64,000 nucleotides of DNA from Macrostomum lignano. Taxonomy: Eukaryota. This document shows positions 4,354 to 64,000 of the stretch, in pieces (position 1 is the stretch's first letter; each line of letters opens with the position of its first letter). The position numbers were made by a program, and so were the translations under genes. Under the pieces are notes generated by a model. The model made no database searches, had not been told where the DNA came from, and saw nothing but the letters and a program-made list of their open reading frames with translations. The stretch spans positions 124,001 to 188,000 of the forward strand of contig NIVC01000275.1 in the NCBI GenBank assembly GCA_002269645.1. Direction: 5' to 3'.

Positions 4354-4384
4354 CTGATGGATCGAATGGGGGATTCGTCTGGAT

Positions 4385-40870: not shown

Positions 40871-41319
40871 CTCCACGGCATACCAATTTTTTAGCCAAAT
40901 ATAATTTATTGAGTATTTAAAATTAGAAAAAGCTCTAACTGGTTCAATCTGCTAAAAGTTTAATCAGTGAAGGCAGTCTGTTAAAATAGTTCTCATTTTA
41001 TTAAACTCCCCTCTCCAAGCTCTTCGAAAAAATTCAGCTACTTTCGAGCCTAAAAATGAGAAGGCAAGACGTGCCTGTCACACTGCCTGCCTGTCTCATA
41101 GGTGAAATGGATTGGTCCATGTGACACGACAACAGGATAATCTAATTGAAAAAAAACGATTCCGACGCAAAGTAGATCTCAGGGGAGCGCAAAATTGATG
41201 CAATAATTTATGGATAGTTTATGACAAGGAAGGGGCGGGACGGACAGCTGGAGCTGAATTCAAATTCGGCAATGGGATTCAGAAATTGCGAATTTCAATG
41301 AATTAGCGCTCAAAATGGC

Positions 41320-43970
41320 GATTCTTGAGAGTGACTCATGGATAATTCTGGGATTCTTGAGAGTGACTCATGGATAATTCTGGGATTCTTGACAGTGACT
41401 CATGCATAATTCTGGGATTCTTGACAGTGACTCATGGATAATTCTGGGATTCTTGACAGTGACTCATGGATAATTCTGGGATTCTTGACAGTGACTCATG
41501 GATAATTCTGGCGATTCTTGACAGTGACTCATGCATAATTCTGGCGATTCTTGAGAGTGACTCATGGATAATTCTGGCGATTCTTGAGAGTGACTCATGG
41601 ATAATTCTGGCGATTCTTGACAGTGACTCATGCATAATTCTGGCGATTCTTGAGAGTGACTCATGGATAATTCTGGCGATTCTTGAGAGTGACTCATGGA
41701 TAATTCTGGCGATTCTTGACAGTGACTCATGGATAATCCTGGCGATTCTTGACAGTGACTCATGCATAATTCTGGCGATTCTTGAGAGTGACTCATGGAT
41801 AATTCTGGCGATTCTTGAGAGTGACTCATGGATAATTCTGGCGATTCTTGACAGTGACTCATGGAAAATTCTGGCGATTCTTGACAGTGACTCATGGATA
41901 ATCCTGGCGATTCTTGAGAGTGAGACTCATGCATAATCCTGGCGATTCTTGACAGTGACTCATGGATAATCCTGGCGATTCTTGACAGTGACTCATGCAT
42001 AATTCTGGCGATTCTTGACAGTGACTCATGGATAATCCTGGCGATTCTTGACAGTGACTCATGGATAATCCTGGCGATTCTTGACAGTGACTCATGGATA
42101 ATTCTGGCGATTCTTGACAGTGACTCATGGATAATCCTGGCGATTCTTGACAGTGACTCATGGATAATTCTGGCGCTTCTTGACAGTGACTCATGCATAA
42201 TTCTGGCGATTCTTGACAGTGACTCATGGATAATTCTGGCGATTCTTGAGAGTGACTCATGGATAATCCTGGCGATTCTTGAGAGTGAGACTCATGGATA
42301 ATTCTGGCGATTCTTGAGAGTGAGACTCATGGATAATTCTGGCGATTCTTGACAGTGACTCATGGATAATCCTGGGATTCTTGACAGTGACTCATGAATA
42401 ATTCTGGCGATTCTTGACAGTGACTCATGCATAATTCTGGCGATTCTTGACAGTGACTCATGCATAATTCTGGCGATTCTTGACAGTGACTCATGGATAA
42501 TCCTGGCGATTCTTGACAGTGACTCATGTATAATCCTGGCGATTCTTGACAGTGACTCATGGATAATCCTGGCGATTCTTGACAGTGACTCATGGATAAT
42601 TCTGGCGATTCTTGACAGTGACTCATGGATAATTCTGGCGATTCTTGAGAGTGAGACTCATAGATAATCCTGGCGATTCTTGACAGTGACTCATGCATAA
42701 TTCTGGCGATTCTTGACAGTGACTCATGGATAATCCTGGGATTCTTGACAGTGACTCATGCATAATTCTGGCGATTCTTGACAGTGACTCATGCATAATT
42801 CTGGCGATTCTTGACAGTGACTCATGCATAATTCTGGCGATTCTTGAAAGTGACTCATGGATAATCCTGGCGATTCTTGACAGTGACTCATGGATAATTC
42901 TGGCGATTCTTGACAGTGACTCATGCATAATTCTGGCGATTCTTGACAGTGACTCATGGATAATTCTGGCGATTCTTGAGAGTGAGACTCATAGATAATC
43001 CTGGCGATTCTTGACAGTGACTCATGCATAATTCTGGCGATTCTTGACAGTGACTCATGGATAATTCTGGCGATTCTTGACAGTGACTCATGCATAATTC
43101 TGGCGATTCTTGACAGTGACTCATGGATAATTCTGGCGATTCTTGAGAGTGAGACTCATAGATAATCCTGGCGATTCTTGACAGTGACTCATGCATAATT
43201 CTGGCGATTCTTGACAGTGACTCATGGATAATTCTGGCGATTCTTGAGAGTGAGACTCATAGATAATCCTGGCGATTCTTGACAGTGACTCATGCATAAT
43301 TCTGGCGATTCTTGACAGTGACTCATGCATAATTCTGGCGATTCTTGAGAGTGACTCATGGATAATTCTGGCGATTCTTGACAGTGACTCATGGATAATT
43401 CTGGCGATTCTTGACAGTGACTCATGGATAATCCTGGGATTCTTGACAGTGACTCATGCATAATTCTGGCGATTCTTGATAGTGACTCATGCATAATTCT
43501 GGCGATTCTTGACAGTGACTCATGCATAATTCTGGCGATTCTTGACAGTGACTCATGGATAATCCTGGCGATTCTTGACAGTGACTCATGGATAATTCTG
43601 GCGATTCTTGACAGTGACTCATGCATAATTCTGGCGATTCTTGACAGTGACTCATGGATAATTCTGGCGATTCTTGACAGTGACTCATGGATAATCCTGG
43701 CGATTCTTGACAGTGACTCATGGATAATTCTGGCGATTCTTGAGAGTGAGACTCATAGATAATCCTGGCGATTCTTGACAGTGACTCATGCATAATTCTG
43801 GCGATTCTTGACAGTGACTCATGGATAATTCTGGCGATTCTTGAGAGTGAGACTCATAGATAATCCTGGCGATTCTTGACAGTGACTCATGCATAATTCT
43901 GGCGATTCTTGACAGTGACTCATGGATAATTCTGGCGATTCTTGAGAGTGAGACTCATGGATAATTCTGG
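41320..43970. repeat. 33-bp satellite GATTCTTGACAGTGACTCATG(G/C)ATAAT(T/C)CTGGC
   Basis: About 80 tandem units; about 6 more at 46884-47095. Confidence 0.97.
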
Positions 43971-44627
43971 TCATTCTTGGGCTGATTTTTGCCAGTGTAA
44001 CCCAAGGCTACTCAAGAAATTCATTCTGGCGACTCTCACAGCTTCCTGTTGCTGTGCAGTGACAGCGCAGCATTAGTGCCTGCAGTCAGAGCTGTCTTTT
44101 CGAGAATCGGCCACTCATTGATCCGAAAAAGGAAGACAGAGGACAAACTCTCGCACCACAGGGACTCCCTTCATTCCAGGGCGCAGAATTTGAACTAACC
44201 CCCCCCCCCAACGCCTCCGAGCTACAAAGTGCAAAGTGGGGATCTGTTCCCAACAGAGCAAACACAGGCGCTGCAAGTCAAATGAAACAGAGGGAGGCAG
44301 AGAATCGAGCAAGTAGTTTCTAGGCGAAATTTGAGCGCCCCATTCATCTCCGCCTCGGGGATCCTGGTTTATGGGGGGGGGGGGTCTGGCGGAAATCTGC
44401 GATGGAAAACCCCGGGCGCCCGCGCTAATGCTGCTGACGATGCCTTTTTTCAGCGAAATAGCGAAATACCACAGAGATCGATTTCATAGAAACTACACGT
44501 TCAGCTCTCCATCATCACAGAATCAAATGTCTGTCTCTACGGAGCATCTGCACCTCTCCCTGTCCTGGTCTGTCACCGACCTGAGTCCTCCGTCTGGTGC
44601 CAGCTGGGGAAAAAGTCGTTTAGGGTC

Positions 44628-44686
44628 TCTCACTTGCACTCTCACTCTCACCCTCACTCTCACTCTCACTTGCACTCTCACTCTCA

Positions 44687-44723
<37 letters not shown>

Positions 44724-44758
44724 CCTCACTCTCACTCTCACTTGCACTCTCACTCTCA

Positions 44759-44810
<52 letters not shown>

Positions 44811-44964
44811 TCTCACTCTTACTGTCACTCTCACCCTCACTCCCACTCTCACTCTCCCTCTTCTCACTCTTACTGTCACTTTCACTCTCACTCCCACTCT
44901 CACTCTCACTCTTACTCTTCTCAATCTTACTGTCACTCTCACTCTCACTCTCATTCTCACTCTT

Positions 44965-44996
<32 letters not shown>

Positions 44997-45108
44997 CCTC
45001 ACTCTCAATCTCACTCTCACTCTTCTCACTCTAACTGTCATTCTCACTCTCACCCTCACTCTCACTTTCACTCTTACTCTTCTCACTCTTACTGTCGCTC
45101 TCACTCTT

Positions 45109-45161
<53 letters not shown>

Positions 45162-45682
45162 TCTCACTCTTACTGTCACTCTCACCCTCACTCCCACTCT
45201 CACTCTCACTCTTCTCACTCTTACTGTCACTCTCACTCTCACTCCCACTCTCACTCTCACTCTTACTCTTCTCAATCTTACTGTCACTCTCACTCTCACT
45301 CTCATTCTCACTCTTACTCTCACTCTCACTCTCACTCTCACCCTCACTCTCAATCTCACTCTCACTCTTCTCACTCTAACTGTCATTCTCACTCTCACCC
45401 TCACTCTCACTTTCACTCTTACTCTTCTCACTCTTACTGTCGCTCTCACTCTTACTCTCACTCTCACTCTCACTCTCACCCTCACTCTCACTCTCACTCT
45501 CACTCTTCTCACTCTTACTGTCGCTCTCATTCTTACTCTCACTCTCACTCTCACTCTCACCCTCACTCTCACTCTCACTCTCACTCTTCTCACTCTTACT
45601 GTCGCTCTCATTCTTACTCTCACTCTCACTCTCACTCTCATTCTCACTCTCACTCACTCTCACTCTCACTCTCACTCTCACC
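44628..45682. repeat. (CTCACT)n hexamer tract; second copy 47749-48797
   Basis: Directly visible. Confidence 0.95.
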
Positions 45683-45874
45683 ATGATATTAAAAGAATAT
45701 TGAAATATTGAAAAATGTTTAAAATGACTTTAATAGCTCGTAACATCTGCAACCTGCATAAGAAGTTTGCAATATCGATATATTTGAAATATGACATTGT
45801 AAATGAAATTTATTCATAGTTCTTGCACAATATACTCTTCAAATAGATTTAGTCGGTTTAAAAAATATTTGCAT

Positions 45875-46883
45875 CTCTGTCAGCAGACTCTGTCAGCAGA
45901 CTTTCAGCAGATTCTATCAGCAGACTCTGTCAGCAGACTCTGTCAGCAGACTCTGTCAGCAGACTCTGTCAGCAGAATCTGTCAGTAAAATCTGTCAGCA
46001 GACTCTGTCAGTAAAATCTGTCAGCAGACTCTGTCAGCAGACTCTGTCAGCAGACTCTGTCAGCAGACTCTGTCAGCAGACTCTGTCAGTAAAATCTGTC
46101 AGCAGACTCTGTCAGCAGACTCTGTCAGTAAAATCTGTCAGCAGACTCTGTCAGCAGACTCTGTCAGCAGACTCTGTCAGCAGACTCTGTCAGCAGACTC
46201 TGTCAGCAGACTCTGTCAGCAGACTCTGTCAGCAGACTCTGTCAGCAGACTCTGTCAGCAGACTCTGTCAGCAGAATCTGTCAGTAAAATCTGTCAGCAG
46301 ACTCTGTCAGCAGACTCTGTCAGCAGACTCTGTCAGCAGACTCTGTCAGCAGACTCTATCAGTAAAATCTGTCAGCAGACTCTGTCAGCAGACTCTGTCA
46401 GCAGACTCTGTCAGCAGACTCTGTCAGCAGACTCTGTCAGCAGACTCTGTCAGTAAAATCTGTCAGCAGACTCTGTCAGCAGACTCTGTCAGCAGACTCT
46501 GTCAGCAGACTCTGTCAGCAGACTCTGTCAGCAGACTCTGTCAGCAGACTCTGTCAGCAGACTCTGTCAGCAGACTCTGTCAGTAAAATCTGTCAGCAGA
46601 CTCTGTCAGCAGACTCTGTCAGCAGACTCTGTCAGCAGACTCTGTCAGCAGACTCTGTCAGCAGACTCTGTCAGCAGACTCTGTCAGCAGACTCTGTCAG
46701 CAGACTCTGTCAGCAGACTCTGTCAGCAGACTCTGTCAGCAGACTCTGTCAGCAGACTCTGTCAGCAGACTCTGTCAGCAGACTCTGTCAGCAGAATCTG
46801 TCAGTAAAATCTGTCAGCAGACTCTGTCAGCAGACTCTGTCAGCAGACTCTGTCAGCAGACTCTGTCAGCAGACTCTGTCAGC
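45875..46883. repeat. 13-bp satellite GTCAGCAGACTCT; second copy about 48990-49672
   Basis: Roughly 77 and 52 units estimated from length; a variant GTCAGTAAAATCT is interspersed. Confidence 0.97.
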
Positions 46884-47807
46884 AGATAATCCTGGCGATT
46901 CTTGACAGTGACTCATGCATAATTCTGGCGATTCTTGACAGTGACTCATGGATAATTCTGGCGATTCTTGAGAGTGAGACTCATAGATAATCCTGGCGAT
47001 TCTTGACAGTGACTCATGCATAATTCTGGCGATTCTTGACAGTGACTCATGGATAATTCTGGCGATTCTTGAGAGTGAGACTCATGGATAATTCTGGTCA
47101 TTCTTGGGCTGATTTTTGCCAGTGTAACCCAAGGCTACTCAAGAAATTCATTCTGGCGACTCTCACAGCTTCCTGTTGCTGTGCAGTGACAGCGCAGCAT
47201 TAGTGCCTGCAGTCAGAGCTGTCTTTTCGAGAATCGGCCACTCATTGATCCGAAAAAGGAAGACAGAGGACAAACTCTCGCTCCACAGGGACTCCCTTCA
47301 TTCCAGGGCGCAGAATTTGAACTAACCCCCCCCAACGCCTCCGAGCTACAAAGTGCAAAGTGGGGATCTGTTCCCAACAGAGCAAACACAGGCGCTGCAA
47401 GTCAAATGAAACAGAGGGAGGCAGAGAATCGAGCAAGTAGTTTCTAGGCGAAATTTGAGCGCCCCATTCATCTCCGCCTCGGGGATCCTGGTTTATGGGG
47501 GGGGGTCTGGCGGAAATCTGCGATGGAAAACCCCGGGCGCCCGCGCTAATGCTGCTGACGATGCCTTTTTTCAGCGAAATAGCGAAATACCACAGAGATC
47601 GATTTCATAGAAACTACACGTTCAGCTCTCCATCATCACAGAATCAAATGTCTGTCTCTACGGAGCATCTGCACCTCTCCCTGTCCTGGTCTGTCACCGA
47701 CCTGAGTCCTCCGTCTGGTGCCAGCTGGGGAAAAAGTCGTTTAGGGTCTCTCACTTGCACTCTCACTCTCACCCTCACTCTCACTCTCACTTGCACTCTC
47801 ACTCTCA

Positions 47808-47844
<37 letters not shown>

Positions 47845-47879
47845 CCTCACTCTCACTCTCACTTGCACTCTCACTCTCA

Positions 47880-47931
<52 letters not shown>

Positions 47932-48085
47932 TCTCACTCTTACTGTCACTCTCACCCTCACTCCCACTCTCACTCTCCCTCTTCTCACTCTTACTGTCAC
48001 TTTCACTCTCACTCCCACTCTCACTCTCACTCTTACTCTTCTCAATCTTACTGTCACTCTCACTCTCACTCTCATTCTCACTCTT

Positions 48086-48117
<32 letters not shown>

Positions 48118-49653
48118 CCTCACTCTCAATCTCACTCTCACTCTTCTCACTCTAACTGTCATTCTCACTCTCACCCTCACTCTCACTTTCACTCTTACTC
48201 TTCTCACTCTTACTGTCACTCTCACCCTCACTCCCACTCTCACTCTCACTCTTCTCACTCTTACTGTCACTCTCACTCTCACTCCCACTCTCACTCTCAC
48301 TCTTACTCTTCTCAATCTTACTGTCACTCTCACTCTCACTCTCATTCTCACTCTTACTCTCACTCTCACTCTCACTCTCACCCTCACTCTCAATCTCACT
48401 CTCACTCTTCTCACTCTAACTGTCATTCTCACTCTCACCCTCACTCTCACTTTCACTCTTACTCTTCTCACTCTTACTGTCGCTCTCACTCTTACTCTCA
48501 CTCTCACTCTCACTCTCACCCTCACTCTCACTCTAACTCTTCTCACTCTTACTGTCGCTCTCACTCTTACTCTCACTCTCACTCTCACTCTCACCCTCAC
48601 TCTCACTCTCACTCTCACTCTTCTCACTCTTACTGTCGCTCTCATTCTTACTCTCACTCTCACTCTCACTCTCACCCTCACTCTCACTCTCACTCTCACT
48701 CTTCTCACTCTTACTGTCGCTCTCATTCTTACTCTCACTCTCACTCTCACTCTCATTCTCACTCTCACTCACTCTCACTCTCACTCTCACTCTCACCATG
48801 ATATTAAAAGAATATTGAAATATTGAAAAATGTTTAAAATGACTTCAATAGCTCGTAACATCTGCAACCTGCATAAGAAGTTTGCAATATCGATATATTT
48901 GAAATATGACATTGTAAATGAAATTTATTCATAGTTCTTGCACAATATACTCTTCAAATAGATTTAGTCGGTTTAAAAAATATTTGCATCTCTGTCAGCA
49001 GACTCTGTCAGCAGACTTTCAGCAGATTCTATCAGCAGACTCTGTCAGCAGACTCTGTCAGCAGACTCTGTCAGCAGACTCTGTCAGCAGAATCTGTCAG
49101 TAAAATCTGTCAGCAGACTCTGTCAGTAAAATCTGTCAGCAGACTCTGTCAGCAGACTCTGTCAGCAGACTCTGTCAGCAGACTCTGTCAGCAGACTCTG
49201 TCAGTAAAATCTGTCAGCAGACTCTGTCAGCAGACTCTGTCAGCAGACTCTGTCAGCAGACTCTGTCAGCAGACTCTGTCAGCAGACTCTGTCAGTAAAA
49301 TCTGTCAGCAGACTCTGTCAGCAGACTCTGTCAGCAGACTCTGTCAGCAGACTCTGTCAGCAGACTCTGTCAGCAGACTCTGTCAGCAGACTCTGTCAGC
49401 AGACTCTGTCAGCAGACTCTGTCAGCAGACTCTGTCAGCAGACTCTGTCAGCAGAATCTGTCAGTAAAATCTGTCAGCAGACTCTGTCAGCAGACTCTGT
49501 CAGCAGACTCTGTCAGCAGACTCTGTCAGCAGACTCTATCAGTAAAATCTGTCAGCAGACTGTCAGCAGACTCTGTCAGCAGACTCTGTCAGCAGACTCT
49601 GTCAGCAGACTCTGTCAGCAGACTCTGTCAGCAGACTCTGTCAGCAGACTCTG

Positions 49654-50204
49654 TCAGCAGACTCTATCAGCAGATCTGCTATTCCCAAACTCACTACAGC
49701 ATCGCTCTTTCTCCCAGGGATCAGGGTGCTCAAAGAGCGAGTCCTGGACCTCCCCACCTTCTCCTGGCTTGTCCCGGGCGGAAGAAGGCACAGGGAGCGG
49801 CTGCGGCGGCTGCTGCTGCTGAGATGCCGGAGGCTCTCCGACCAGACTGAGGTAGACAAACTCGACCAGCTCAACAATGAAGGCCGCCGTGAGGCCGATG
49901 CACAGCGAGCACAGGCCGCCAATTCTGCTCAACAAGATGTTGACATCTAGGGTGAGCTTCTCCAGCTTCCAGCTAATGTCCCAGTTCTTCCTACGGATCT
50001 TCACGCAGGCGTAGCTGGCCTTCCCGGCCAGTCGGGAGTCGAACTGGCCATCCTGGTACTCGCTGACTTCCCGGGACAGCGCATACAGCAGGCGGTCTGG
50101 CGACACTGCCGGATCTTTTTCCCTGGCCAGATGGGCCTTGTACTGGTCCGCCAGCGCTGCCATCTTGCTGGGCAGCGGAGCCCAGTGAGTGGCCGACAGG
50201 GTTG
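49654..50204 (-). CDS. DEG/ENaC channel, distal part of the last exon (TM2 and C-tail), separated from the rest by the LINE
   Basis: LLSRIGGLCSLCIGLTAAFIVELVEF is a DEG/ENaC TM2-type segment. The first 96 bp duplicate 56009-56104. Stop TGA at 49656-49654. Confidence 0.88.
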
Positions 50205-50321
50205 ACTTGACTTACTTGACTTAGCTGCAGGGGGCGTCCGGCGGATGCAGCGAGGAGGCGGAGGAGACCGCCCATTCCGCTAGCCCCTGGCGACCAACGA
50301 CTTCCGTTGAAGTGGTGTCGC

Positions 50322-53300
50322 TCAGGGGGACCCGTCGGTCTCGCCTGCAGCGCGGTCCTCCTCACCGACGGTGGGGAAGAAATCAGCTCGTCCGGTGTCC
50401 CTGAGGTACCGGGCGAGCAGTGGGATGCTCTCGGGCCTGCAAACGTCGGAGAGAACCGGGTTTGGCCCGAGGTGAGTAAGCCTGGCCCTGGTGAAAACCG
50501 GGCAGTGGCAGATAAAATGCTCGGCGTTTTCACTGCCTGAGCGGCAGAAGGGGCACCGCTCCTCGGGTACTTGGCCCTGAAGGAAGCGGTGGCGAGAGAA
50601 GCAGCCATGCCCGGAGAGGGCCATGCTAACTGCTCTGAGGTCTCTGCGGTTGAGCCTGAGGAGGGCTCTACGCAGGAGAGGAGAGGGACAGGTGACGGCA
50701 GCACGGGATTGCCTACAATTCCGGGTGTCGTGCCACCTGCGGAGATGCTCGGAGTCAGCCCAGCGCTTAACGCGGGAATTGATCACCGAGGCGGGGATGG
50801 GGGCACCCGGGCCCGGCCCCAATAGCGCGCCGGCGGAGCCAGCCTTGGCCAGCAGGTCAGCGCGCTCGTTGCCGAGGAAGCCGGCGTGGCCCGGGATCCA
50901 TCTGAGCTCCACCTGGTTGCCTAGCGCAAGCCCGTTGAGCTGGGTGTTGCAGTCCAGGACGGACCTGGAGCTGGCGGTGCTGCGGCAGAGGGCCCGAAGG
51001 GCTGCTTGGCTGTCAGAGTGAAAAATAAATTTCCGGCCGCTAAGCTGCCTTCGGCGCAGCTCTGCCGCGCAGGAGCTGATGGCAAGCACCTCGCTCTGAA
51101 AAACACTGGAGTTGAGCCCAGTGTGCTGGGAGTAGCTCCACACCACTTCTCCCTTGAAGAAGACGCAAGCTCCGAAGCCTGAAAGACCATGCCTCATAGA
51201 GCCGTCAGTGTAACAGTGGACTTCAGAGTCGCTCCAGCTGTCACTCGCCTCGTGTCGAGGCTGAATGGTGACCTTATACCTTTGGCTCAGGAGAAGGGTG
51301 GCTGGGATCGAGTCCGTGAGGATGTTGAGCCCGCCACACTCCTCGAGAGCCTTGAGGCAGAGGTCAGAGTGCGGGATAAGCGACCGCTTCTTAAAGGCCC
51401 GCACTTTCTTGAAGGCCACCCCAGCATCCAGAAGACGCCGGGTGCTCTTCGCCGCCTCTCCTTTGATATAAATATCCAAAGGAGGGGCGCAGAGGAAGGC
51501 ATTCATGCCTTCAAAAGGAGTAGAGGGTGGAGCGCCCATAGTCATGCGGCAGGCTCTGCCCTGGATTTTGTAGAGAGCGTCGAGGTTGCTCTTGACGCTC
51601 AGGCCGCTAGCCCACACGAGGCTGGCGTAACTGATCGAGGGGCGGATGATGGCAGTGTAAATCCACCACAGCTTCCAGCTTCCAGGTGAGCCCCCAGGTG
51701 GTGCCCACGGCGCGCCTGATCTGAGCCAGTACAGCCAGGGCTTTTTTGGCTTTAGTTTGAATGTGCGGAGTCCAGTTAAGCCTGTGGTCCAGAGTGAGGC
51801 CCAGGCAGCGGACCTGCTTCTCCATGGAAATATTCTTTCCATAGAGGGTGAGGGGCTTAATGGTCCAGAGCAGTTTGTTGGTAAACATGACTGCTGTGGT
51901 TTTCGACTCTGAGAGTCTAAGGCCACATTGGTCTGCCCAACGCTCCGCTCGTCCCAGAAAGCCCTGCAGAAGGTCTCTGATGGTATCAACCGAGGGGCCC
52001 GCGCATATCGCGGTCACATCATCGGCATAGCCCACCTTGAGAATGGGGTCGTGGAGATCACTGCAAAGCAACTCATCCATGACCATGTTCCAGAGAACGG
52101 GGGTGAGAACGCCGCCCTGGGGGCCCCCTTTCAGGACAGGCACCGAAAGAGAGCTGCCGCTCAGGTGGGCCACAACAGTGCGGTTTCGGATCATGAACAT
52201 GATCCACCGGACAAGGTGAGGGTGCGTGGCCCTGGATTCCAGGGCTCTGCAAAAGGCCTCGAAGATGACGTTGTCGAAGGCCCCCTCAATGTCCAGGAAA
52301 AGCGAGAGGGCAAAGCCGCTGCCAAGAACGGCCCTCTCCAGGAAGTCAACAATGACATGGAGAGCACTCTCGGTTGACCTGCCCGCGCGGAAGGCGTGCT
52401 GGTTCTGCGAGAGTGGGAAGCGCTTCAGCTCGACCGAAAGTAGGCGCCAAAGCACCAGTCTCTCGAGGAGCTTGAGGCAGAAAGAAGTGAGGCTGATAGG
52501 CCTGAAGGCCTTCACCGATTGGTAGTCGCTCTTTCCAGGCTTGGGGATAAAGACCACCCGGGCCTCTCTCCATGCAACTGGTACATAGCCCAGCTCCATA
52601 CAAGCTCGAAGGAGACGACAGAGCAGGTCCAGGAAGCGGTGGTTTTTCACCGCCTCGTGCAAGAACGCTGGGTAGATGCCGTCGGGCCCAGGCGCCTTGA
52701 ACGGGTTAAAGGACCTTGCCGCTCTAATAATGCGGTCTTTGGTGATCATAGACTTTGCTAGGCCTTGCCCTCCCACTGTGTGGTCGGGCGGGCCCTGCTG
52801 AGTCGGAGATTTAGGGAAAAAACTGTTGAGCATGAGCTCTAGAGTCTCTTCCGAACTCTCTGTGACCGAGCCGTCAGGTCTCTTCACAACAGAGAGTTTA
52901 GAAAAACGGTCATTAGTGAGTGCCTTAACCACGCGGGCTACGGGGCGAGAGCCCTCAAGCCCTTCGCAATATTGGCGCCACTTGGCCGTCTTGGCCCTTC
53001 TGACTTGGCCCTTAAACTCGTGGATCGCACGGGTATAGGCCTCTCTGTCAGATGGGTCTTTGGTTTTGAGCGCTCGCCTTTGGAGGGTCCTGGCTCGGCG
53101 CCGAAGGGCCCCGAGCTCTGGGTTCCACCAGGGAGCAGATTTCTTGCCTTTATAGGCCTTTAGGGGGCAGGCTGCTTCAAAGGCAGTGGTGATCGCCCCG
53201 CCCAGGGAGGAGGCGAGATCGTCCACCACCTGGCAGTCAGAGAGGTCACTGGGGGGTCAAGATCCCGAAGGCCGCGGCTCAGCTTCGAGCCAAAGGCGGC

Positions 53301-54025
53301 CCAATCGGTGTTTCTGACGTTCCGACTCCAAGTGACCTTAGGCTTTTGCTTGGTCGGCCCAATGCAAAAGCGGATAAAGCGGTGGTCCGAGAGCGAGTCC
53401 TCGTCCCACACTCGCCAGCCCGTAACTGCGGAAAGCAGTCCGGGTGAGGCGATGGTGGTGTCGATGACTTCGGCCCACCGCCCATTATTGAACGTTGGTG
53501 CATTGCCCACGTTACAGAAGTTGAGGTTAGTGCTGCTGACATAGGCCAGCAGCTCCTCGCCTCTGCTATTGATGTTCTTGCTGCCCCAATGCAGGTGGTG
53601 TGCGTTCACATCCCCTGCAATGAGCAGCTCGAACCGATGGGACGCAGCATAGTCAGTAAGGTTGACTAACGCGTCGCAGACAACTGGGGCATCGCCCGGG
53701 AAATAGGCAGAAGCTACCAGCACAGGTTTATTGGGAATGAGGTTATTGATTTGAACAACACAGATGTCCCCAGTCGAGAGATCAGGTCTCATCCATGCCT
53801 CAAAAGCTTTTGCAGCAAAGACCAGAGATCTTGGGCGAGGCTGAGAGCCCGCCATGCAAAAACAGTGGTAGCCAGATGGCACATTATTTGGCTTACCTTT
53901 AGTCATCCAGGGCTCCTGTACGAAGACCAGGCCCGGAAGCTGTTGCTCTGCGTGCGCATCAGGTTGACCGACGCCGCCACGCAGTGCTGGGTGTTGATCT
54001 GCAGACACCAGGTAGTCGTTGGCAT
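50322..54025 (-). CDS. LINE ORF2: AP endonuclease, reverse transcriptase, RNase H, C-terminal CCHC; broken by frameshifts at about 53945, 53230 and 51690
   Basis: LQINTQHCVAASVNL, FVQEPW, IAGDVNAH, VIDTT, SDH; KAPGPDG, FRPISLTS, QHAFRAGRSTE, FLDIEGAFD, GGPQGGVLTP, YADD; YTDGS, SEVLAI, SDSQAA, WIPGH..GNERADLLAK; CPFC...EHFICHC. Confidence 0.93.
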
Positions 54026-55538
54026 CATTGCAGATCGGATGTTGCAGCCGCCAGGAGTTCCTCCTCCTCCTCGGCGCTCACCGGCTTCGGGTCGGGGTCG
54101 CCGGTGTCCATGGGCTCTTCTTCAGCAAAAGGCCCCGATTGGCCGGAAGGCAGTAGGCAGCGTTCGCCGCCCTTTGCCCACCATCCATGGGGTCCTCCGC
54201 CTCAGATTGGCCCAATGCCCTGGAGCAGCCAGCCGCCTGGGCAGGCGGGTCCGTCTCCAGTCGGCCCTGCCCCGAGGGGTTGGGCCCAGCTGGGACGTCC
54301 CCACCCTCCCTGGACGAACTGGTGCGCCTAGGCGTCCCGGCGACCTCTCGCCTCAGCTGGGAGATTTTGGCGGTACGGACTGCCTCAGCTGCACGCTGGT
54401 ACAGGCCGCGCCGCTTGGTGCTACGCGCCGGGCGTCGGTCGCCTCCGCCCTCAGCAGCGCGCTCAGCTTTGCCCGCGCGGCCGTGCTGCCGGGCAGGGCG
54501 GTTTGCTTTGGCAGTCTGAGCAGAGGCTTGCGCCTCGGCCCCGGCCGCCTCCGCATCCCGCCCGCCCTGCTCACTGCCACGGGGAGGGTCGGCCTCGTAG
54601 GAGCGGATGCGCAGCTTCCAAAGGCCGACGTTGATGAAGCTGCCGTGTGGATAACGCCTCATCCAGGCGTCCGACAGCCCCAGGATGGCTGTGAAGCCAG
54701 TGCCGTCGGTGCGCTTAAGGGTGTCATGCACCACTAGGCCCGCGGCGGGAAGCTCCCGGTTGACTGCTAGCAGTCCTTTCCGGAGCTCGTCAGCAGAGGT
54801 AACAACGCTCCTGGCCGGGACCCAGATTCGATGCCTCTTGGTCCGGGGGCGCTCGTCCTCTCTGCAGAAGGCTAGGTTGAGGTCCCAGCTCTGCTCGGGC
54901 AGCAGCTCAAGGAGCCGCCGACCCGAGTCAGCATGGCCAAATAAGAAGGCACGAGTCCCTCGTCGCATTCGAATGAATGTTCAGAGGCGTGCCCTTCAGA
55001 GTTTGCTTCCACAGGAGGCCATCAACGGCACTTCTCACCTGCTTCAGCTGATCGGGAGACAGGCGCGCGTCCTTTCCCAGGATGACAACCGCCGGTTGCC
55101 TCTTTGCCGCATCAGCGTAGGAGGCCCGGGGGTCAGTGGAGCTTTCTTCAGGTGGGCTGTCCACCCTCCCGGCTGCATCGGCCTCCCTATCCTGGGCAGG
55201 GGCTTCCGTGGGCTCGAGGCCCTCTTCCGCCACCGCCCCAGACTGGGAAGCTTCGCTGCCGCGGGCCGTTGGCCCCTGGCACCGGTTTGGCTTCCGCCCT
55301 CCTTGGCCCGCCTCGCCTTGTTAAGTCGACGGCGGGCAGCTCCAGAGGTGGTGCTGCGTTTCTTAGCAGCTGGAGTAGCAGGTGTCTTCTCGGAGGCACC
55401 GCTCAGAGTTGGCTCCACGGGTCTCGCCGAGGCGTCCCCGATGGTAGCAGGTGGTATGGCCGAGGAGTCCACGGCCCCAGCCGAGGCCGGAGGCACTGTG
55501 TCATCCACAGCCGGTTTGTTACTTCGGTTAGAAGCCAT
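54025..55538 (-). CDS. LINE ORF1 (nucleic-acid chaperone), reconstructed across about 3 frameshifts
   Basis: MASNRSNK start at 55538; basic RRRLNKARR; SYADAAK; RIWVP...NRELP domain; acidic end SAEEEEELL...DLQ* with TGA at 54027-54025. Confidence 0.7.
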
Positions 55539-56008
55539 TGGCTGGAAGTAAAAAGGTGGGACTTCCTGCAGAACACAGGCAAAGAGCCGCAAGGCCGCAA
55601 CCCCAAACCAAGCGGCAGGCCCCCAAAAAGCAAAATACCACCCTGCGGGGGACCCAAAAGCGCAAGGGGAACCGTTAGCGACCAGACTACTCCCTGGCCA
55701 AGCGTCCATCAGCACGGAGTTACACTGGGACATTAGAGGGTGCGTTTATGGTCACACCAGGACCCGGCGCCAACGAATCAGCTCGGCAGGGCCCAAGGGG
55801 GCCTGCCTTAACACCCACGGGACGAGTACCCTTCGAAGTGCGCCTTGCAAGGTGAAAATCAGGAGACAGAGTCTCTTGAGCTATCAGCCCGCCAGGGGAG
55901 GCAGGTGTGAGCATCGCTGGCTGGGATAAAGGCCATACCAGTCTCATACTGCACAGATAGTTCACCACGCCATTACGTGCAGGACCCGGGGTCCTGGGGG
56001 CAACACCC

Positions 56009-59000
56009 CCGGATCTTTTTCCCTGGCCAGATGGGCCTTGTACTGGTCCGCCAGCGCTGCCATCTTGCTGGGCAGCGGAGCCCAGTGAGTGGCCGACAGG
56101 GTTGGCTCGTAGGTAAAGTAGGTGCACCTGGGGAGGCGGAGTTGTAGATATCGATCCATATCTTCTGACCCAGCAGACACTGATCCAGAACAATCTTGGC
56201 CTAGTAAGATCTTGACCCATTAGATCTTGACGCAGCAGATCTTTACCCAGCAGATCTTGACCCAGCAGACACTGACCCAGTGGTCACTGACCCATTAGAT
56301 CTTGACCCAGCAGCCACTGACCCAGTAGACACTGACCCATTAGATCTTGACCCAATAGACACTGGCCCATTAGATCTTGACCCAGTAGACACTGACCCAT
56401 TAGATCTTGACCCAGTAGACACTGACCCATTAGATCTTGACCCAGTAGACACTGACCCATTAGATCTTGACCCAGTAGACACTGACCCATTAGATCTTGA
56501 CCATGTAGACACTGATCCATTAGATCTTGACCCAGTAGACACTGACCCATTAGATCTTGACCCAGTAGACACTGACCCATTAGATCTTGACCCAATAGAC
56601 ACTGACCCATTATATCTTGACCCTGTAGACACTGATCCATTAGATCTTGACCCAATAGACACTGGCCCATTAGATCTTGACCCAGCAGCCACTGACCCAG
56701 TAGACACTGACCCATTAGATCTTGACCCAATAGACACTGGCCCATTAGAGCTTGACCCAATAGACACTGACCCATTAGATCTAGACCCAGTAGACACTGA
56801 CCCATTAAACCGTGACCCAGTAGACACTGACCCATTAGATCTTGATCCAAAAGACACTGACCCAGTAGACACTGACCCATTAGATCTTGACCCAAAAGAC
56901 ACTGACCCAGTAGACACTGACCCAGTAGACACTGACCCAGTAGACACTGACCCACTAGATCTTGATTCAGTAGACACTGACTCAGTAGACGCTGACCCAG
57001 AAGACACTGACCCAGTAGACGCTGACCCAGTAGACACTGATCCAGTAGACACTGACCCAGTAGACGCTGACCCAGTAGATGCTGACCCAGTAGACACTGA
57101 CCTAGTTGATCCGGCCAATTACTGACAGGAACTCACCGAGGATGGCAATCAACGGAGAAGTTTTTCCTCAGCTGCTCAGTCTGGCTGAGCACCTTCTCCG
57201 CGCAGACCAATCGCTCAGTGAGTCGCGGCCATTTCAAGTCGATGCAGTAGGGCGCCGAAGGCCCGGCTTGCCCGGTCTCGCTCGGAGCCAGCGGCACCGG
57301 CCACAGCGAGTTCAAGCAGCCGCAGCGCTGCAGCATGTGCCGCTGGAGCTGCTGGTTGACGCACTGGTGATAGTCTGCGGCGTAGTCAGTGCCCAGGTGT
57401 CGCACCGGTGGCCGGTCGTCCCGGCAGTTGTGGCGTGGGGTGCGCAGCTTCCGCCAACCGGTGGTGCCGTAGTTCACCTCGTTCAGGCGGCCCGGCTCGG
57501 CGTTGAAGCCGCTCTGGGCCAGGTCCGGGGCCGTGCCCGCCTCGTGCAGGACTACCTGGGATGCCGGGCGAGGGACAGGGTTTTTTTCACACCGGTTACA
57601 GATGAACAGGGGTTATTCACACCGGTAACAGATGAACAGGGGTTCTTCACACCGGTTACAGATGAACAAGGGGTCACACCGGTTACAGATGAGCAGGGGT
57701 TCTTCACACCGGTTACAGATGAGCAAGGGTTCTTCACACCGGTTACAGATGAACAGGGGTTCTTCACACCGGTTACAGATGAACAGGGGTTCTTCACACC
57801 GGTTACAGATGAACAGGGGTTATTCACACCGGTTACAGATGAACAGGGGTTATTCACACCGGTTACAGATGAACAGGGGTTATTCACACCGGTTACAGAT
57901 GAACAGGGGTTCTTCATACCGGTTAGGGATGGACAGGAGCTCTTCACACCGGTCAGTGAGCCCAGGAAACACAGTATGCAGGTTCTGATCCCAGATTCCC
58001 AGATGAAATGGTCGACGCGGCGGCATTTTATTCTCAGGTCATGCTTTATTCAATATCCGAGGTTCAATGACACAACTGACACAAATCAGATTTTATCATT
58101 CTTTTTTCGACTCGACTCACGGATTTTCTTTCGCTAATTCGCGAATGCGACGGATTTCGGAGAGTCGCCCAGATTAGCAGATTCGATTACATTAAATCGA
58201 GTAAATGGATTAAGTCACTAAATCTGAGCTTCTCTTCTCTGAGCTGTTGCCTCCCTGAGTCTGATCGAACTGCTGATTCACATTGATTTCCATTATATCC
58301 AGAAACCTATGCTCCAACATTGGCAACTCCCTAGCAACCTATATTCCAAAACCGCCTTGACAACGTCCTAATAACCTAATACCAACATCTCCTTGACAAC
58401 GCCCTAACAACCTATGCTTCAACATCCTCTTGACAACGCCCTAGCAACCTTTGCTTCAACATCCCTTTGACAACGCCCTAGCAACAAGGATTCCCCACTC
58501 GAGCTCACCTTGACGCCCTCGCCTCTGCTGAGCACATCGTACACAAAGCTGTGCCTCAGCGACGGCAGCTCCTTGGCCGGAGTGAGCGAGACGACAACCA
58601 CCACCGACTCGATGCCTCGGGCCGCGCTGGCGTCCACGGTGAAGCAGTTGAAGAACTCGCTGTGCTGAAACAGCCTGACGCTGATCTTGGCGAACTCGTC
58701 ATCAGCCTGGCAGTTCTCGGCCAGCACCTGCATGCCGTCCACGCTGACCATGCAGAGGAACAGAGAGTCCATTCTGTGCCCGATGGCCACCGTGTCGCTG
58801 TGGTTGAGCTGCTGGTAGTAGGTGTTCACATTGTCGTAGGCGAACAGGCCAGCCATTTGCTCGGCGAGGCGGCCGGTGAGGGCAGCGGCGCTGATGTTTC
58901 TCAACAGCCGCTGAAACTCCGAGGGCGACAGCACCGCGCCGCTGCGCCAGGCGGCTTCGGCCGCGCCGCTGAACGGCTGATGCGAGCACAGGGTGAAGGA

Positions 59001-59225
59001 GGGAAACGCCGGCTTGTAGTCAAAAGCTGTGGTGGTGTGCCAGCCGGTGTTGAAGGCCAGGTAGTCGCTGACGAGAAAGCCGGAGGTGACCAGCAGCACC
59101 AGGGTCATGCCGATGACGAACAGAGTCCACAGGATCCGAGTGAACGGCGCCTTGGACTTCGCGATCTTCTGGACGCCTCTGATGGAGGAGCCTTCGCACA
59201 GGATGCGCAGCCTGTTGCCCGACAT
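56009..59225 (-). CDS. DEG/ENaC (amiloride-sensitive sodium channel family) subunit. Exons 59225-58509, 57555-57137, 56127-56009, continuing at 50108-49654; insertion-disrupted allele
   Basis: N-terminal SSIRG, TM1 RILWTLFVIG...LVSDYL, FPSFTLCS, FNCFT, GVK|VVLHE.GT.P...G...PG, Cys-rich YHQC...RCGC...YC...C...CHPR|C. Removing the LINE and one TSD copy gives 717+419+574 = 1710 nt, a 569-aa open frame. Confidence 0.9.
56150..57115. repeat. 15/30-bp minisatellite AGATCTTGACCCAGT-AGACACTGACCCATT, channel intron 2
   Basis: Alternating related 15-mers. Confidence 0.93.
57585..57955. repeat. 30-bp minisatellite ACACCGGTTACAGATGAACAGGGGTT(C/A)TTC, channel intron 1
   Basis: About 12 units. Confidence 0.93.
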
Positions 59226-60285: not shown

Positions 60286-60907
60286 GTCCAATTCAGACCG
60301 GGAAGTTTTCGATTCAAAAATGTTTGCTAGAGTTCAGAGATTTCTACAGTAAAACTGCTCCGCAAATCCAGTGCACTTGCCAGCTAAGGTTTGCAGTTCG
60401 GAATTTCAACAATCTCAGAGCAGCTAAGCAGCACAAGACGATTTGGCTTCTCAAGAAATTCCGCACCGAAGGTCTGAAGGATTAGCCAAGAGGTCTCAGA
60501 GATCCTTATTCCCGGAGTAAAATGCGTATTAGGGCTCAGAATATGGGTAATGAGTTTGAGCTGGATTTATTCAAGATTGCCAAAGGCCACTGGCTCTCTT
60601 TCCCTCCCCTTCTCCCTCTTCTCTGTCTCCCTTCAAGTGCGAGGTTAATTTTTTTCCTCACAAAGCGTTTCCTCTCCTTTCAGAGCAGGAAAATCGAAAA
60701 ATTTTGGCCCCTATAGGACTGGGATTTCTTTATCTCCCGGTAGTCAGGGAGTTGCTCTGCGACGAGCTTTGCTGAAAACTTAGCTTGACCTTCATGCGCT
60801 GCGCTTAATTGTAGTTGGGGTCTGGGAGATGGCCTCGGATGCTACGCCCGTTCATGACTCCGCATGCAGACCGACTCAAGCTCAGTGAGTGGCTCAGGCT
60901 GATTGCC

Positions 60908-61952
<1,045 letters not shown>

Positions 61953-62484
61953 ACTCTAGGGCATGTAAGCGCATCAAGTCAGGGTTAATGATGGTGAGGC
62001 GTATATTTCATATCAGAAAGTTACAGTCTGTACAAGCCAATCCGAATTCCGAAACAATAAAATACTGTTAAATTTAAGATTTTTCTCTCGCATCAAGAAT
62101 ATCAACATCGGATAGTTAAAGTATTGAAAAATATTCACATGACAAATTTATAACGCAAAGGGTTACAGAGGGAGGCTGAAGTCAGGGGCAAGCCTGGGTG
62201 ACAAAATTCGTTAGTGAAGCACTGCAGCGGCTCACAGTGCTACTCTGATTACATTTCACGTGGAATGTTGAAATCTGCGCAGTCTGTCTTTATTTTCAGC
62301 TGGCTAATTAGTGTCTGCAATTTTATGCAATCGGCGGGCGGAGCTGCCAGTCACCAGTCTGCCGGGCAGGACTGCCTAATTCGACTGCTAATCCCCACCA
62401 TAATAAAGTTTCGAACATCTTCGATACTTTACTTATTGGATTAAAATGTTCTGCTGGCCGAAAAATTCAGATGGTGAAGAGGAA

Positions 62485-63425
62485 AGAGTGGGGGCGAATG
62501 GGAGAGAGTGGGAGAGAGTGGGAGAGAGTGGGAGAGAGCGGGAGAGAGTGGGAGAGAGTGGGAGAGAGTGGGAGAGAGCGGAAGAGAGTGGGAGAGAGTG
62601 GGAGAGAGCGGAAGAGAGTGGGAGAGAGTGGGAGAGAGTGGGAGAGAGTGGGAGAGAGCGGGAGAGAGTGGGAGAGAGCGGGAGAGAGTGGGAGAGAGTG
62701 GGAGAGAGTGGGAGAGAGCGGGAGAGAGTGGGAGAGAGTGAGAGAGAGCGGAAGAGAGCGGGAGAGAGCGGGAGAGAGTGGGAGAGAGCGGGAGAGAGCG
62801 GAAGAGAGCGGGAGAGAGTGGGAGAGAGTGGGAGAGAGTGGGAGAGAGTGGGAGAGAGTGGGAGAGAGTGAGAGAGAGTGAGAGAGAGTGGGAGAGAGTG
62901 GGAGAGAGCGGGAGAGAGTGGGAGAGAGTGGGAGAGAGTGGGAGAGAGTGGGAGAGAGTGGGAGAGAGCGGGAGAGAGTGGGAGAGAGTGGGAGAGAGTG
63001 GGAGAGAGTGAGAGAGAGCGGGAGAGAGCGGAAGAGAGCGGGAGAGAGCGGGAGAGAGTGGGAGAGAGCGGGAGAGAGCGGAAGAGAGCGGGAGAGAGTG
63101 GGAGAGAATGGGAGAGAGCGGGAGAGAGCGGAAGAGAGTGGGAGAGAGTGAGAGAGAGTGGGAGAGAGCGGGAGAGAGCGGAAGAGAGTGGGAGAGAGCG
63201 GGAGAGAGCGGAAGAGAGTGGGAGAGAGTGGGAGAGAGTGGGAGAGAGTGGGAGAGAGCGGGTGAGAGCAAAAGAGAGTGGGAGAGAGTGGAAGAGAGCG
63301 GAAGAGAGCGGGAGAGAGCGGGAGAGAGTGGGAGAGAGCGGAAGAGAGCGGGAGAGAACGGGAGAGAGCGGCAGAGAGTGGGAGAGAGCGGAAGAGAGTG
63401 GGAGAGAGTGGGAGAGAGTGGGAGA
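62485..63425. repeat. 10-bp satellite GGGAGAGAG(T/C)
   Basis: About 94 units estimated from length. Confidence 0.96.
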
Positions 63426-63493
63426 GAGCAGTGGAGCCCAGCTTGGATCCGGCTGCACAAACGCGAGCGGGTTCCAGCCTCTCCGCAGCCGTA

Positions 63494-63864
63494 TCACACG
63501 TAGCTCGCCCCCAGCGCCCTGGCCAGCCGGTCCTCGCTGTCCTCCTCATCCTCGCCAGCATCGGCGGCCGCAGCGGAGTTTCTCGGTGGCAGCAGCAGAT
63601 GCTGGATGGTGGTATAGTGCAGGCCGCCGCCGCCGTCCCCAGCTGATGCCGCAGACGAGGCGAGATCTGAGGACAGCCGCTGCTGAACGGGGCGCGGCGC
63701 GCCGCAGCAGCCGCAGGCGCCTTGAAGCAGCGGCTCGTAGGCGTTGCCGCGACCTCCGCCGCCGCCGCCGCCCCCGCTGCGCCGTGTCTGGGACACCGGC
63801 CCGGCGCCCGGTTGCTCGAGTTAGCGCCAGGGCTGAAGCCAGAAGTGATTGGATTGTTCTGCAT
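63494..63864 (-). CDS. Candidate coding segment of an unidentified gene (GC/CpG-rich, Gly/Ala/acidic)
   Basis: Frame 63796-63494 reads SQTRRSGGGGGGGGRGNAYEPLLQ...GLHYTTIQHLLLPP...EDEEDSEDRLARALG with GC-ending codons, like the verified exons. An ATG at 63864 is in a different frame. No family recognised. Confidence 0.4.
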
Positions 63865-64000
63865 TTTTATTGGCTTGCTACTAAGTAACTTGCAGTAAGT
63901 AGTGTGACTGGAATTTTACCGCCTTATAAAGATTAAAAGCGTTGAAAATGCTATTAACATCATTCTAACTGGGCTCGTTCCATCTCCTCCCACTCTCTCC

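What the first reader, a model, noticed from the sequence alone, without database searches (positions are those of the whole stretch)
50109..56104. Full-length LINE inserted in a DEG/ENaC exon with a 96-bp target-site duplication
Seen: 50109-50204 and 56009-56104 are identical and bracket a 5804-bp APE-RT-RNase H element in the same orientation as the channel gene. Deleting the element plus one copy restores a 569-aa open frame. With the element, the upstream half reads EKDP-GVLPPGPRVLHVMAW* and stops before TM2. Established: TPRT normally gives TSDs of about 5-25 bp, and TSDs near or above 100 bp are mostly associated with RTE-type elements. Inference: this LOA/R1-like family makes a widely staggered second-strand nick; zero mismatches imply a very recent insertion.
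Basis: partly seen in the sequence, partly recalled or inferred. Interest (0 to 1): 0.8.

Follow-up and report, generated by a model that had tools for sequence, protein, structure and literature searches.

The report
Young flatworm LINE with 96-bp duplication
A very young, full-length jumping gene (LINE) of the flatworm Macrostomum lignano sits in the last exon of a sodium-channel gene, flanked by an unusually long but not unprecedented 96-bp target duplication; one copy cannot show that the whole family does this.

Summary
50109-50204 and 56009-56104 are identical (96/96), occur nowhere else in the window, and bracket a 5804-bp minus-strand element with APE, RT, RNase H and a C-terminal Cys-His motif.

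The host is a three-exon DEG/ENaC gene of Macrostomum lignano. Removing the element and one repeat gives a spliced 569-aa CDS that matches Pfam ASC end to end. It is not a contiguous open frame.

Both element ends are confirmed from other copies or relatives:
- The 3' end CTGCAGCTAAGTCAA is shared with a 62%-identical intact relative.
- The 5' end is shared with a sibling copy at another locus.

So this is most likely a real target-site duplication from target-primed reverse transcription.

Three sibling copies are 100% identical in protein wherever they align, so the family is very young. As assembled, this copy has six frame breaks. Four are single-base deletions, two at clear base runs. These are probably long-read consensus errors.

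The claim that the family makes a wide stagger is untested, because only one copy could be read. A distant relative has an ordinary 13-bp duplication. "LOA/R1-like" is unresolved; the evidence supports only an I/R1/LOA-type element.

Long LINE duplications are already known (R9, RTE-1, Dualen). Moderate interest.

The parts
56009..56104 (-). Upstream copy of the 96-bp target-site duplication (gene orientation). It lies wholly inside channel exon 3 and encodes PTLSATHWAPLPSKMAALADQYKAHLAREKDP.
   Evidence: Identical to 50109-50204, with no extension on either side. Only two occurrences in the window.
50205..56008 (-). Full-length LINE, 5804 bp: 5' UTR, ORF1, ORF2 (APE-RT-RNase H-CCHC), 3' UTR, and a short TAAGTCAAG-repeat tail.
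   Evidence: Pfam domains. Collinear with intact relative L001. No other copy in the window.
50109..50204 (-). Downstream copy of the 96-bp target-site duplication. The channel exon 3 continues from it down to the stop at 49654.
55539..56008 (-). Element 5' UTR (470 nt), starting GGGTGTTGCCCCCAGG.
   Evidence: Sibling gene model P0002, at a different locus, reads LLPPGPRVL from element nt 6-32 directly after unrelated integrase-like flank. The family's 5' end is therefore within about 5 nt of this copy's. Rfam finds no ribozyme.
54025..55538 (-). ORF1 (506 aa once the sibling-informed indels are allowed for). It has no CCHC knuckle and no Pfam domain. As assembled it has frame breaks at 55254 (-1), 54933 (-5) and 54132 (-1, CCC to CC).
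   Evidence: Its stop codon overlaps the ORF2 start (ATGA at 54028-54025).
50322..54028 (-). ORF2 (1234 aa once the indels are allowed for). APE about 53382-54028, RT 51790-52548, RNase H 50835-51224, CX2CX8HX2C 50502-50555. As assembled it has frame breaks at 53951 (-1), the C6 run 53251-53256 (-1), and 51675-51684 (10 nt where siblings have 6).
   Evidence: 62% aa identity to the intact 1232-aa ORF2 of L001.
50205..50321 (-). 3' UTR with conserved stem-forming blocks. The terminal tail (TAAGTCAAG)2T is at 50205-50223.
   Evidence: Blocks CCTGAGCGAC/GTCGCCAGGGG, TAGCGG/CCGCTG and the end CCCTGCAGCTAAGTCAA are conserved in L001.
58509..59225 (-). DEG/ENaC exon 1 (start codon, TM1).
57137..57555 (-). 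DEG/ENaC exon 2 (Cys-rich extracellular domain).
   Evidence: GT-AG junctions. RGEGVK|VVLHE is continuous with trematode homologues.
56009..56127 (-). DEG/ENaC exon 3, the part upstream of the element. The acceptor AG is at 56129-56128.
   Evidence: CHPR|CTYFTYEPTLSATHWAP matches the conserved C-x-P-R-C-x-Y-x-T-Y...S-x-T-x-W motif of the homologues.
49654..50204 (-). DEG/ENaC exon 3, the part downstream of the element. It includes TM2 (LLSRIGGLCSLCIGLTAAFIVELVEF) and the stop.

Best explanation
[quoted passage not shown] Inferred steps:
1. The antisense strand was nicked at 5'-CAGGGTTG^GCTCG-3' (window + strand, between 56104 and 56105).
2. Its 3' end TTG paired with a CAA in the element RNA's TAAGTCAAG-repeat tail and primed cDNA synthesis. 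Synthesis ran to the RNA's 5' end.
3. The sense strand was broken 96 nt downstream, at 5'-GATCCGG^CAGTG-3'.
4. Fill-in of the 96-nt stagger produced the duplication.

The insertion truncates the channel before TM2.

Whether 96 nt is this family's normal stagger or a single displaced second-strand break is not decided by the data. I favour the one-off event by about 2:1.

The six frame breaks in this copy are most likely long-read consensus errors, so the real element may be intact.
For: Shown:
- The 96/96 repeat is exact, has sharp edges, and is unique in the window.
- APE, RT and RNase H domains are present.
- The 3' terminus CTGCAGCTAAGTCAA and upstream 3' UTR blocks are shared with an intact relative. 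That relative's flank diverges exactly there.
- The 5' terminus is shared with sibling P0002 at another locus.
- The 3' junction reads ...AAGT|CAACC, which continues the tail unit AAGTCAAG for 3 nt. This is a microhomology.
- One copy of the 96 bp aligns without a gap to five trematode DEG/ENaC proteins. The restored CDS is a complete ASC domain.
- Siblings P0002, P0003 and P0005 have different flanking genes but are 100% identical in protein in every aligned block, about 1240 codons for P0002.
- With the six indels allowed for, ORF1 is 506 aa and ORF2 is 1234 aa, both in frame. L001 ORF2 is 1232 aa.
- Four of the six breaks are 1-nt deletions, two of them at clear runs (CCC to CC, C7 to C6) and two that may be.
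- Both public assemblies of this species are PacBio CLR based.

Bearing on one-off versus family rule:
- A 34%-identical relative has a 13-bp TSD.
- R2 insertions shift to large duplications when the element's own second-strand nick fails (PMC13486585).
Against: - No raw reads or second assembly could be checked across the junctions.
- No protein for this channel gene from the other assembly is in the database, so neither an empty nor a filled site was seen independently.
- 36% of Mlig_3_7 scaffold length is reported to be chimeric between subgenomes.
- Two of the six frame breaks are not typical consensus errors: a 5-bp deletion, and a 10-nt stretch containing a 7-bp tandem repeat that replaces 6 nt. 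The copy may therefore be truly defective.
- The window's assembly of origin is not known.
- The nick positions and priming microhomology are inferred from the junctions, not observed.
Confidence: 0.85

Rival explanations
1. Family rule. The ORF2 protein of this LINE family, or a second subunit of it, routinely cuts the second strand about 100 nt downstream. On this view long TSDs are a property of the family, as in R9 or RTE-1.
For: The insertion looks otherwise canonical: full length, precise 3' end with microhomology, no deletion. Long fixed or variable staggers exist in other LINE lineages, such as R9 at 126 bp and Dualen. A randomly met copy with a 96-bp TSD is more likely under this model than under an ordinary-TSD model.
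Against: Only one copy was examined. The finding was picked because it is an outlier. The only relative with both junctions readable has a 13-bp TSD, and two more show no flanking repeat over 12 nt. All three are only 32-34% identical, so this is weak evidence.
Confidence: 0.3
2. Assembly artefact. The contig joins, through identical LINE sequence, the left junction of one insertion and the right junction of another insertion 96 bp away in a homeologous or haplotype copy of the gene. Alternatively, a consensus error duplicated the flank.
For: The species has three subgenomes 1.4-2.4% apart, and 36% of Mlig_3_7 scaffold length is reported as chimeric. The element itself carries probable consensus errors.
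Against: It needs two independent same-orientation insertions of one family within 96 bp in two gene copies. At 1.4-2.4% divergence, 96 bp from two subgenomes should differ at 1-2 sites, and none is seen. Both junctions are base-precise at the family's true termini.
Confidence: 0.07
3. A 96-bp (32-codon) tandem duplication already existed in the exon, and the LINE landed exactly at its midpoint with no TSD of its own.
For: The window is full of tandem repeats, and 96 is a multiple of 3.
Against: Five trematode homologues align to a single copy with no gap. The insertion point would have to coincide exactly with the repeat junction. The two copies are identical.
Confidence: 0.01

Closest known systems
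I-clade / I-like LINEs (Drosophila I factor type); nearest readable example here is the Diaphorina citri element in L002 (P0032)
   Same: ORF2 order is APE-RT-RNase H plus a C-terminal Cys-His motif. The 3' end is a short repeat rather than poly(A). There are two ORFs. The D. citri relative is 34% identical over 95% of ORF2 and has a (TAA)7 tail.
   Different: The tail unit here is TAAGTCAAG, not TAA. ORF1 has no CCHC knuckles. The TSD is 96 bp against 13 bp in the relative and 10-14 bp for the I factor (the latter from my own knowledge). No RT tree was built.
R1 clade (TRAS1, R1Bm)
   Same: The endonuclease is closest to TRAS1 EN among solved structures (1wdu, E 1.5e-13), with a weak match to R1Bm EN (2ei9) and no match to L1 EN.
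   Different: R1-clade elements are mostly site-specific (rDNA, telomeric repeats) and give about 14-bp TSDs (own knowledge). This copy is in a unique coding exon, and sibling copies sit in unrelated genes.
R9 of bdelloid rotifers (Gladyshev and Arkhipova 2009, as cited in PMC9977147 and PMC13486585)
   Same: A LINE whose insertions carry a TSD of about 100 bp (126 bp).
   Different: R9 is an R2-derived element with a restriction-like endonuclease and is specific for a 28S rDNA site. Its long TSD is seen in all copies. Here the endonuclease is APE type, the target is not rDNA, and only one copy is known.
RTE-1 of C. elegans / RTE clade
   Different: RTE elements have a single ORF, no RNase H and a very short 3' UTR. 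This element has ORF1, RNase H and a 117-nt structured 3' UTR.
R2 insertions made without the element's own second-strand nick (PMC13486585)
   Same: The outcome is a canonical 3' junction with the 5' junction displaced downstream on the second strand. This gives a large target duplication in a transcribed region.
   Different: Those are experimental R2 protein variants in human cells, with duplications of about 1 kb. Nothing here shows that second-strand nicking failed.
Trematode DEG/ENaC channels annotated 'FMRFamide-activated amiloride-sensitive sodium channel' (host gene)
   Same: 38-39% identity over 88% of the protein. TM2 is nearly identical, and the Cys pattern is conserved.
   Different: The source annotation is by similarity only. 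No ligand or function is known for the M. lignano gene.

Membership tests
Non-LTR retrotransposon (LINE) inserted by TPRT | APE-type endonuclease and reverse transcriptase in one ORF | tested here: met
   Exo_endo_phos_2 2.4e-19 and RVT_1 6e-28. Collinear with an intact 1232-aa ORF2.
Non-LTR retrotransposon (LINE) inserted by TPRT | No terminal repeats of its own; a defined 3' end with a tail; flanked by a target-site duplication | tested here: met
   The only long direct repeat is the 96-bp flank. The 3' end is conserved with L001. The tail is (TAAGTCAAG)2T.
Non-LTR retrotransposon (LINE) inserted by TPRT | Multiple dispersed copies with the same termini | tested here: met
   P0002, P0003 and P0005 lie in different gene contexts and are 100% identical in protein. 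P0002 shares the 5' end. These are protein data only, with no DNA of the other copies.
I / R1 / LOA supergroup of APE LINEs | RNase H domain downstream of RT | tested here: met
   RNase_H 1.9e-11.
I / R1 / LOA supergroup of APE LINEs | Cys-His motif near the ORF2 C-terminus | tested here: met
   CPFCRSGSENAEHFICHC at 50502-50555.
I / R1 / LOA supergroup of APE LINEs | ORF1 with CCHC zinc knuckles | tested here: not met
   No CX2CX4HX4C in the sibling ORF1 (4 Cys in 488 aa) or in L001 ORF1. No Pfam hit.
   No labelled reference LINE sequences could be obtained. The only indirect hints are EN nearest TRAS1 and a relative with an I-type (TAA)n tail.
LINE families with systematically long TSDs (R9, RTE-1, Dualen) | Long TSD in most or all copies of the family | not testable with these tools
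   No other genomic copy was reachable.
LINE families with systematically long TSDs (R9, RTE-1, Dualen) | RLE endonuclease (R9, Dualen), or single-ORF RTE architecture without RNase H | tested here: not met
   The endonuclease is APE only, and both ORF1 and RNase H are present.
DEG/ENaC channel (host gene) | Full-length ASC domain with TM1, Cys-rich ectodomain and TM2 | tested here: met
   PF00858 at 134 bits against a cut-off of 23.6, covering profile 2-455 of 455. Alignment to trematode channels.

The most novel reading that the evidence does not exclude
This young, probably still active M. lignano LINE family is an APE-type I/R1/LOA-like element. It may place its second-strand break about 100 nt from the first as a rule. 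That would make it the first long-stagger family of this supergroup, and it would sit in a flatworm that can be made transgenic, so the mechanism of second-strand cleavage could be dissected there.
Probability: 0.3. Interest if true: 0.6.

Novelty: new member of a known kind. Interest (0 to 1): 0.38.

Why it matters
How APE-type LINEs make the second-strand break is still open. The length of the target duplication is its only genomic footprint.

A family with a long, reproducible stagger would be a useful natural model, as R9 is for R2-type elements. This family looks recently active: at least four protein-identical copies, and ORFs that are in frame once probable consensus errors are allowed for. 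M. lignano is also experimentally tractable.

As it stands, one 96-bp TSD is an uncommon but known kind of outcome. It also marks a fresh knockout of one DEG/ENaC gene copy in a neopolyploid genome, where homeologs probably buffer the loss.

Tried and rejected
1. HDV-like or other ribozyme at the 5' end, which would allow co-transcription with the host gene. Rfam found only two sub-threshold chance hits.
2. Other genomic copies of the family:
   - none in the window;
   - exact-protein look-ups for P0005 and for a window ORF found nothing;
   - the JGI metagenome scan found no relative.
3. TSDs of relatives:
   - L001 lacks a visible 5' flank;
   - L003 shows nothing and L004 has an assembly gap at the 3' end;
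   - L005 and L006 have no flanking repeat over 12 nt;
   - only L002 was readable, at 13 bp.
4. Reading a TSD from the flanks of gene model P0002 (...GNSYLLVAG | LINE | VKYLLVMQDQ...). The two integrase-like stretches overlap but are not identical, and they are filtered through predicted splicing. This was uninterpretable.
5. I first placed the exon 3 acceptor inside the repeat (CCCAG|CAAG at 56069-56068). That would have duplicated the splice site and let splicing bypass the element, giving a 549-aa CDS. I rejected it because the acceptor at 56129-56128 restores the conserved CxPRCxYxTY...W motif and the 569-aa CDS.
6. Independent confirmation of the junction or of an empty site from the other assembly's proteins. 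No M. lignano hit for the channel was found.
7. Clade assignment by named database hits. None of the 107 hits carries a LINE clade name.
Full report
**Observation**

The repeat is real. 50109-50204 and 56009-56104 are identical over 96 bp, and the bases on either side differ at once. The 96-mer occurs only twice in the window, and the next best partial match is 13 nt.

The 5804 bp between the copies (50205-56008) has no other copy in the window. On the minus strand it encodes Exo_endo_phos_2/Exo_endo_phos, RVT_1 and RNase_H, followed by a CX2CX8HX2C motif.

**Organism and family**

A search with the conceptual ORF2 returned Macrostomum lignano proteins:
- P0005 at 100% identity (best local alignment covers 33% of the query);
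- P0002 and P0003 at 94% (best alignment covers 43-45% of the query; the shortfall from 100% reflects alignment gaps, and the aligned blocks are 100% identical);
- an intact 1232-aa ORF2 at 62% identity on a Logan contig (L001).

L001 carries ORF1 (525 aa) and ORF2, and it is collinear with the window element.

**Element ends**

The 3' end is confirmed. L001 shares the terminal CCCTGCAGCTAAGTCAA and two upstream stem-forming blocks of the 3' UTR, and its flank diverges exactly where the window element's tail meets the repeat. In the window the last unit is doubled, (TAAGTCAAG)2T.

The 5' end is confirmed. Gene model P0002 sits in an unrelated, integrase-like context. It reads LLPPGPRVL from element nt 6-32 directly after its own flank.

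The element is therefore full length, and the 96 bp abuts the family's true termini on both sides.

**Host gene**

The restored genomic frame is open for about 221 codons and then meets stops in a 15-bp minisatellite.

Three GT-AG exons give exactly 569 aa once the element and one repeat are removed:
- exon 1, 59225-58509;
- exon 2, 57555-57137;
- exon 3, from 56127 down to the stop at 49654.

This protein matches Pfam ASC over the whole profile (134 bits). It is 38-39% identical to trematode DEG/ENaC channels.

The alignment runs continuously across both exon junctions and across the 32 residues encoded by the repeat. One copy of the 96 bp is therefore the ancestral state. The repeat starts 23 nt inside exon 3.

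With the element in place, translation ends at ...EKDPGVLPPGPRVLHVMAW* after 433 residues. TM2 is lost.

**State and age of the element**

As assembled, ORF1 and ORF2 are each broken three times.

Sibling models P0002, P0003 and P0005 have different flanking genes. They are 100% identical to this copy in every aligned block, about 1240 codons for P0002. Yet they read straight through five of the six breaks.

| Break (window) | Change relative to siblings |
|---|---|
| 55254 | -1 nt |
| 54933 | -5 nt |
| 54132 | -1 nt (CCC to CC) |
| 53951 | -1 nt |
| 51675-51684 | 10 nt where siblings have 6 |
| 53251-53256 | C6 run; one more C restores the frame; sibling models skip this stretch |

Allowing for these six indels gives ORF1 of 506 aa and ORF2 of 1234 aa, both exactly in frame. 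The ORF1 stop overlaps the ORF2 start (ATGA, 54028-54025).

Five private indels against no amino-acid substitution is not what neutral decay gives. It fits consensus errors in a multi-copy repeat. Both public assemblies of this species rest on PacBio CLR data, assembled with Canu and polished with Pilon (PMC5730564).

The 5-bp deletion and the 7-bp tandem repeat are less typical of such errors, so real damage is not excluded.

Either way the family is very young. The identical repeats and the otherwise intact host gene also point to a recent insertion.

**Mechanism (inferred from the junctions)**

The element is in sense orientation. The first nick therefore lies on the antisense strand at the left edge of the repeat, 5'-GGGTTG^GCTCG-3' on the window + strand between 56104 and 56105.

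The 3' junction ...TAAGTCAAGT|CAACCC continues the tail unit for three bases (CAA). This is as expected if the primer end TTG annealed to a CAA of the RNA tail.

The sense strand was broken 96 nt downstream, at GATCCGG^CAGTG. Fill-in of the stagger gives the repeat.

No target bases were lost and no extra bases are evident, apart from possible G ambiguity at the 5' junction.

**One-off or family rule?**

This could not be tested, because no other genomic copy was reachable. Evidence from distant relatives (32-34% identity) is weak:
- The Diaphorina citri element in L002 has a (TAA)7 tail and a 13-bp TSD, AGTTCAACAAATC.
- L005 and L006 show no flanking repeat over 12 nt.

Long LINE duplications are on record. 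R9 gives 126 bp and Dualen gives longer ones (PMC9977147; PMC13486585). RTE-1 is another case, from my own knowledge.

R2 insertions made without the element's own second-strand nick shift to large duplications that use host nicks in a transcribed region (PMC13486585). That offers a ready one-off explanation for a sense-strand break inside a gene.

I put the family rule at about 0.3.

**Artefact**

The genome has three subgenomes 1.4-2.4% apart, and many scaffolds are chimeric (PMC10733133).

A chimeric join could mimic this structure only if two independent, same-orientation insertions lay 96 bp apart in two gene copies. Even then, 1-2 mismatches in the 96 bp would be expected, and none is seen. 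I rate this at about 0.07. It can only be settled with reads.

**Clade**

The evidence is as follows:
- RNase H and the C-terminal Cys-His motif place the element in the I/R1/LOA group.
- The endonuclease is nearest TRAS1 among solved structures.
- The nearest relative with a readable tail is I-like.
- ORF1 lacks CCHC knuckles.

No reference tree was possible. 'LOA/R1-like' remains a guess.

**Verdict**

This is a real, very recent LINE insertion with an unusually long but precedented TSD, in a coding exon of a flatworm DEG/ENaC gene. The family-level claim is untested. Interest is moderate.

Noticed in passing
window 54025-54028 (minus strand): The ORF1 stop and ORF2 start overlap as ATGA once the sibling-informed frame is used. 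This arrangement suggests termination-reinitiation coupling. In relative L001 the two ORFs are 24 nt apart.
   Followed up: partly
window 50205-50330 (minus) and L001:5843-5966: The 3' UTR blocks CCTGAGCGAC...GTCGCCAGGGG and TAGCGG...CCGCTG, and the end CCCTGCAGCTAAGTCAA, are conserved between two families that are only 62% identical in ORF2. They can form two stems. This is a likely RT recognition element, but there are only two sequences and no compensatory changes.
   Followed up: partly
window 56068-56069 and 50168-50169 (minus strand): An in-frame cryptic acceptor (TGCCCAG|CAAG) lies inside the repeat and is therefore duplicated. Splicing from exon 2 to the downstream copy would skip the whole LINE and give a 549-aa protein lacking 20 conserved residues (CTYFTYEPTLSATHWAPLPS). 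Whether it is used is unknown.
   Followed up: partly
window 50099-50108 versus 55999-56008: The first 10 nt of the element (GGGTGTTGCC) match 7 of 10 positions of the target sequence just 3' of the repeat (CAGTGTCGCC). This explains why repeat finder extended the pair to 109 nt at 96%. It may be chance (about 0.4% per alignment) or microhomology at the 5' junction.
   Followed up: no
window 57552-57947, 56117-57100, 49003-49652: Both introns of the channel gene hold minisatellite arrays (about 33-bp and 15-bp units). The sequence directly after the stop codon is a 13-bp array.
   Followed up: no
window 43757-46579 and 46884-49678: There is a tandem segmental duplication of about 3.1 kb at 96.4% identity. 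It ends 25 nt inside the 3' end of the channel CDS, and each copy holds a long (CA/TG)-rich array. It may be real or an assembly redundancy.
   Followed up: no
window 41316-43979, 13560-15648, 60889-61977, 62433-63888: There are large tandem arrays with units of about 33 bp, about 40 bp and shorter. Simple and tandem repeats dominate the window, which fits what is published for this genome.
   Followed up: no
window 3425-4717 (minus) and 33777-35057 (plus): Two other likely coding exons are present. One has a C1 (phorbol-ester/DAG) domain (33 bits). The other has a bZIP_2 basic-leucine-zipper domain (41 bits) in a Gln-rich protein.
   Followed up: partly
L002:7640-7660 and 12940-12985: A Diaphorina citri relative (P0032) has ORF1 and ORF2 joined in one 1607-aa gene model. 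It ends in (TAA)7 and is flanked by the 13-bp TSD AGTTCAACAAATC. It lies close to Ig-domain genes.
   Followed up: partly
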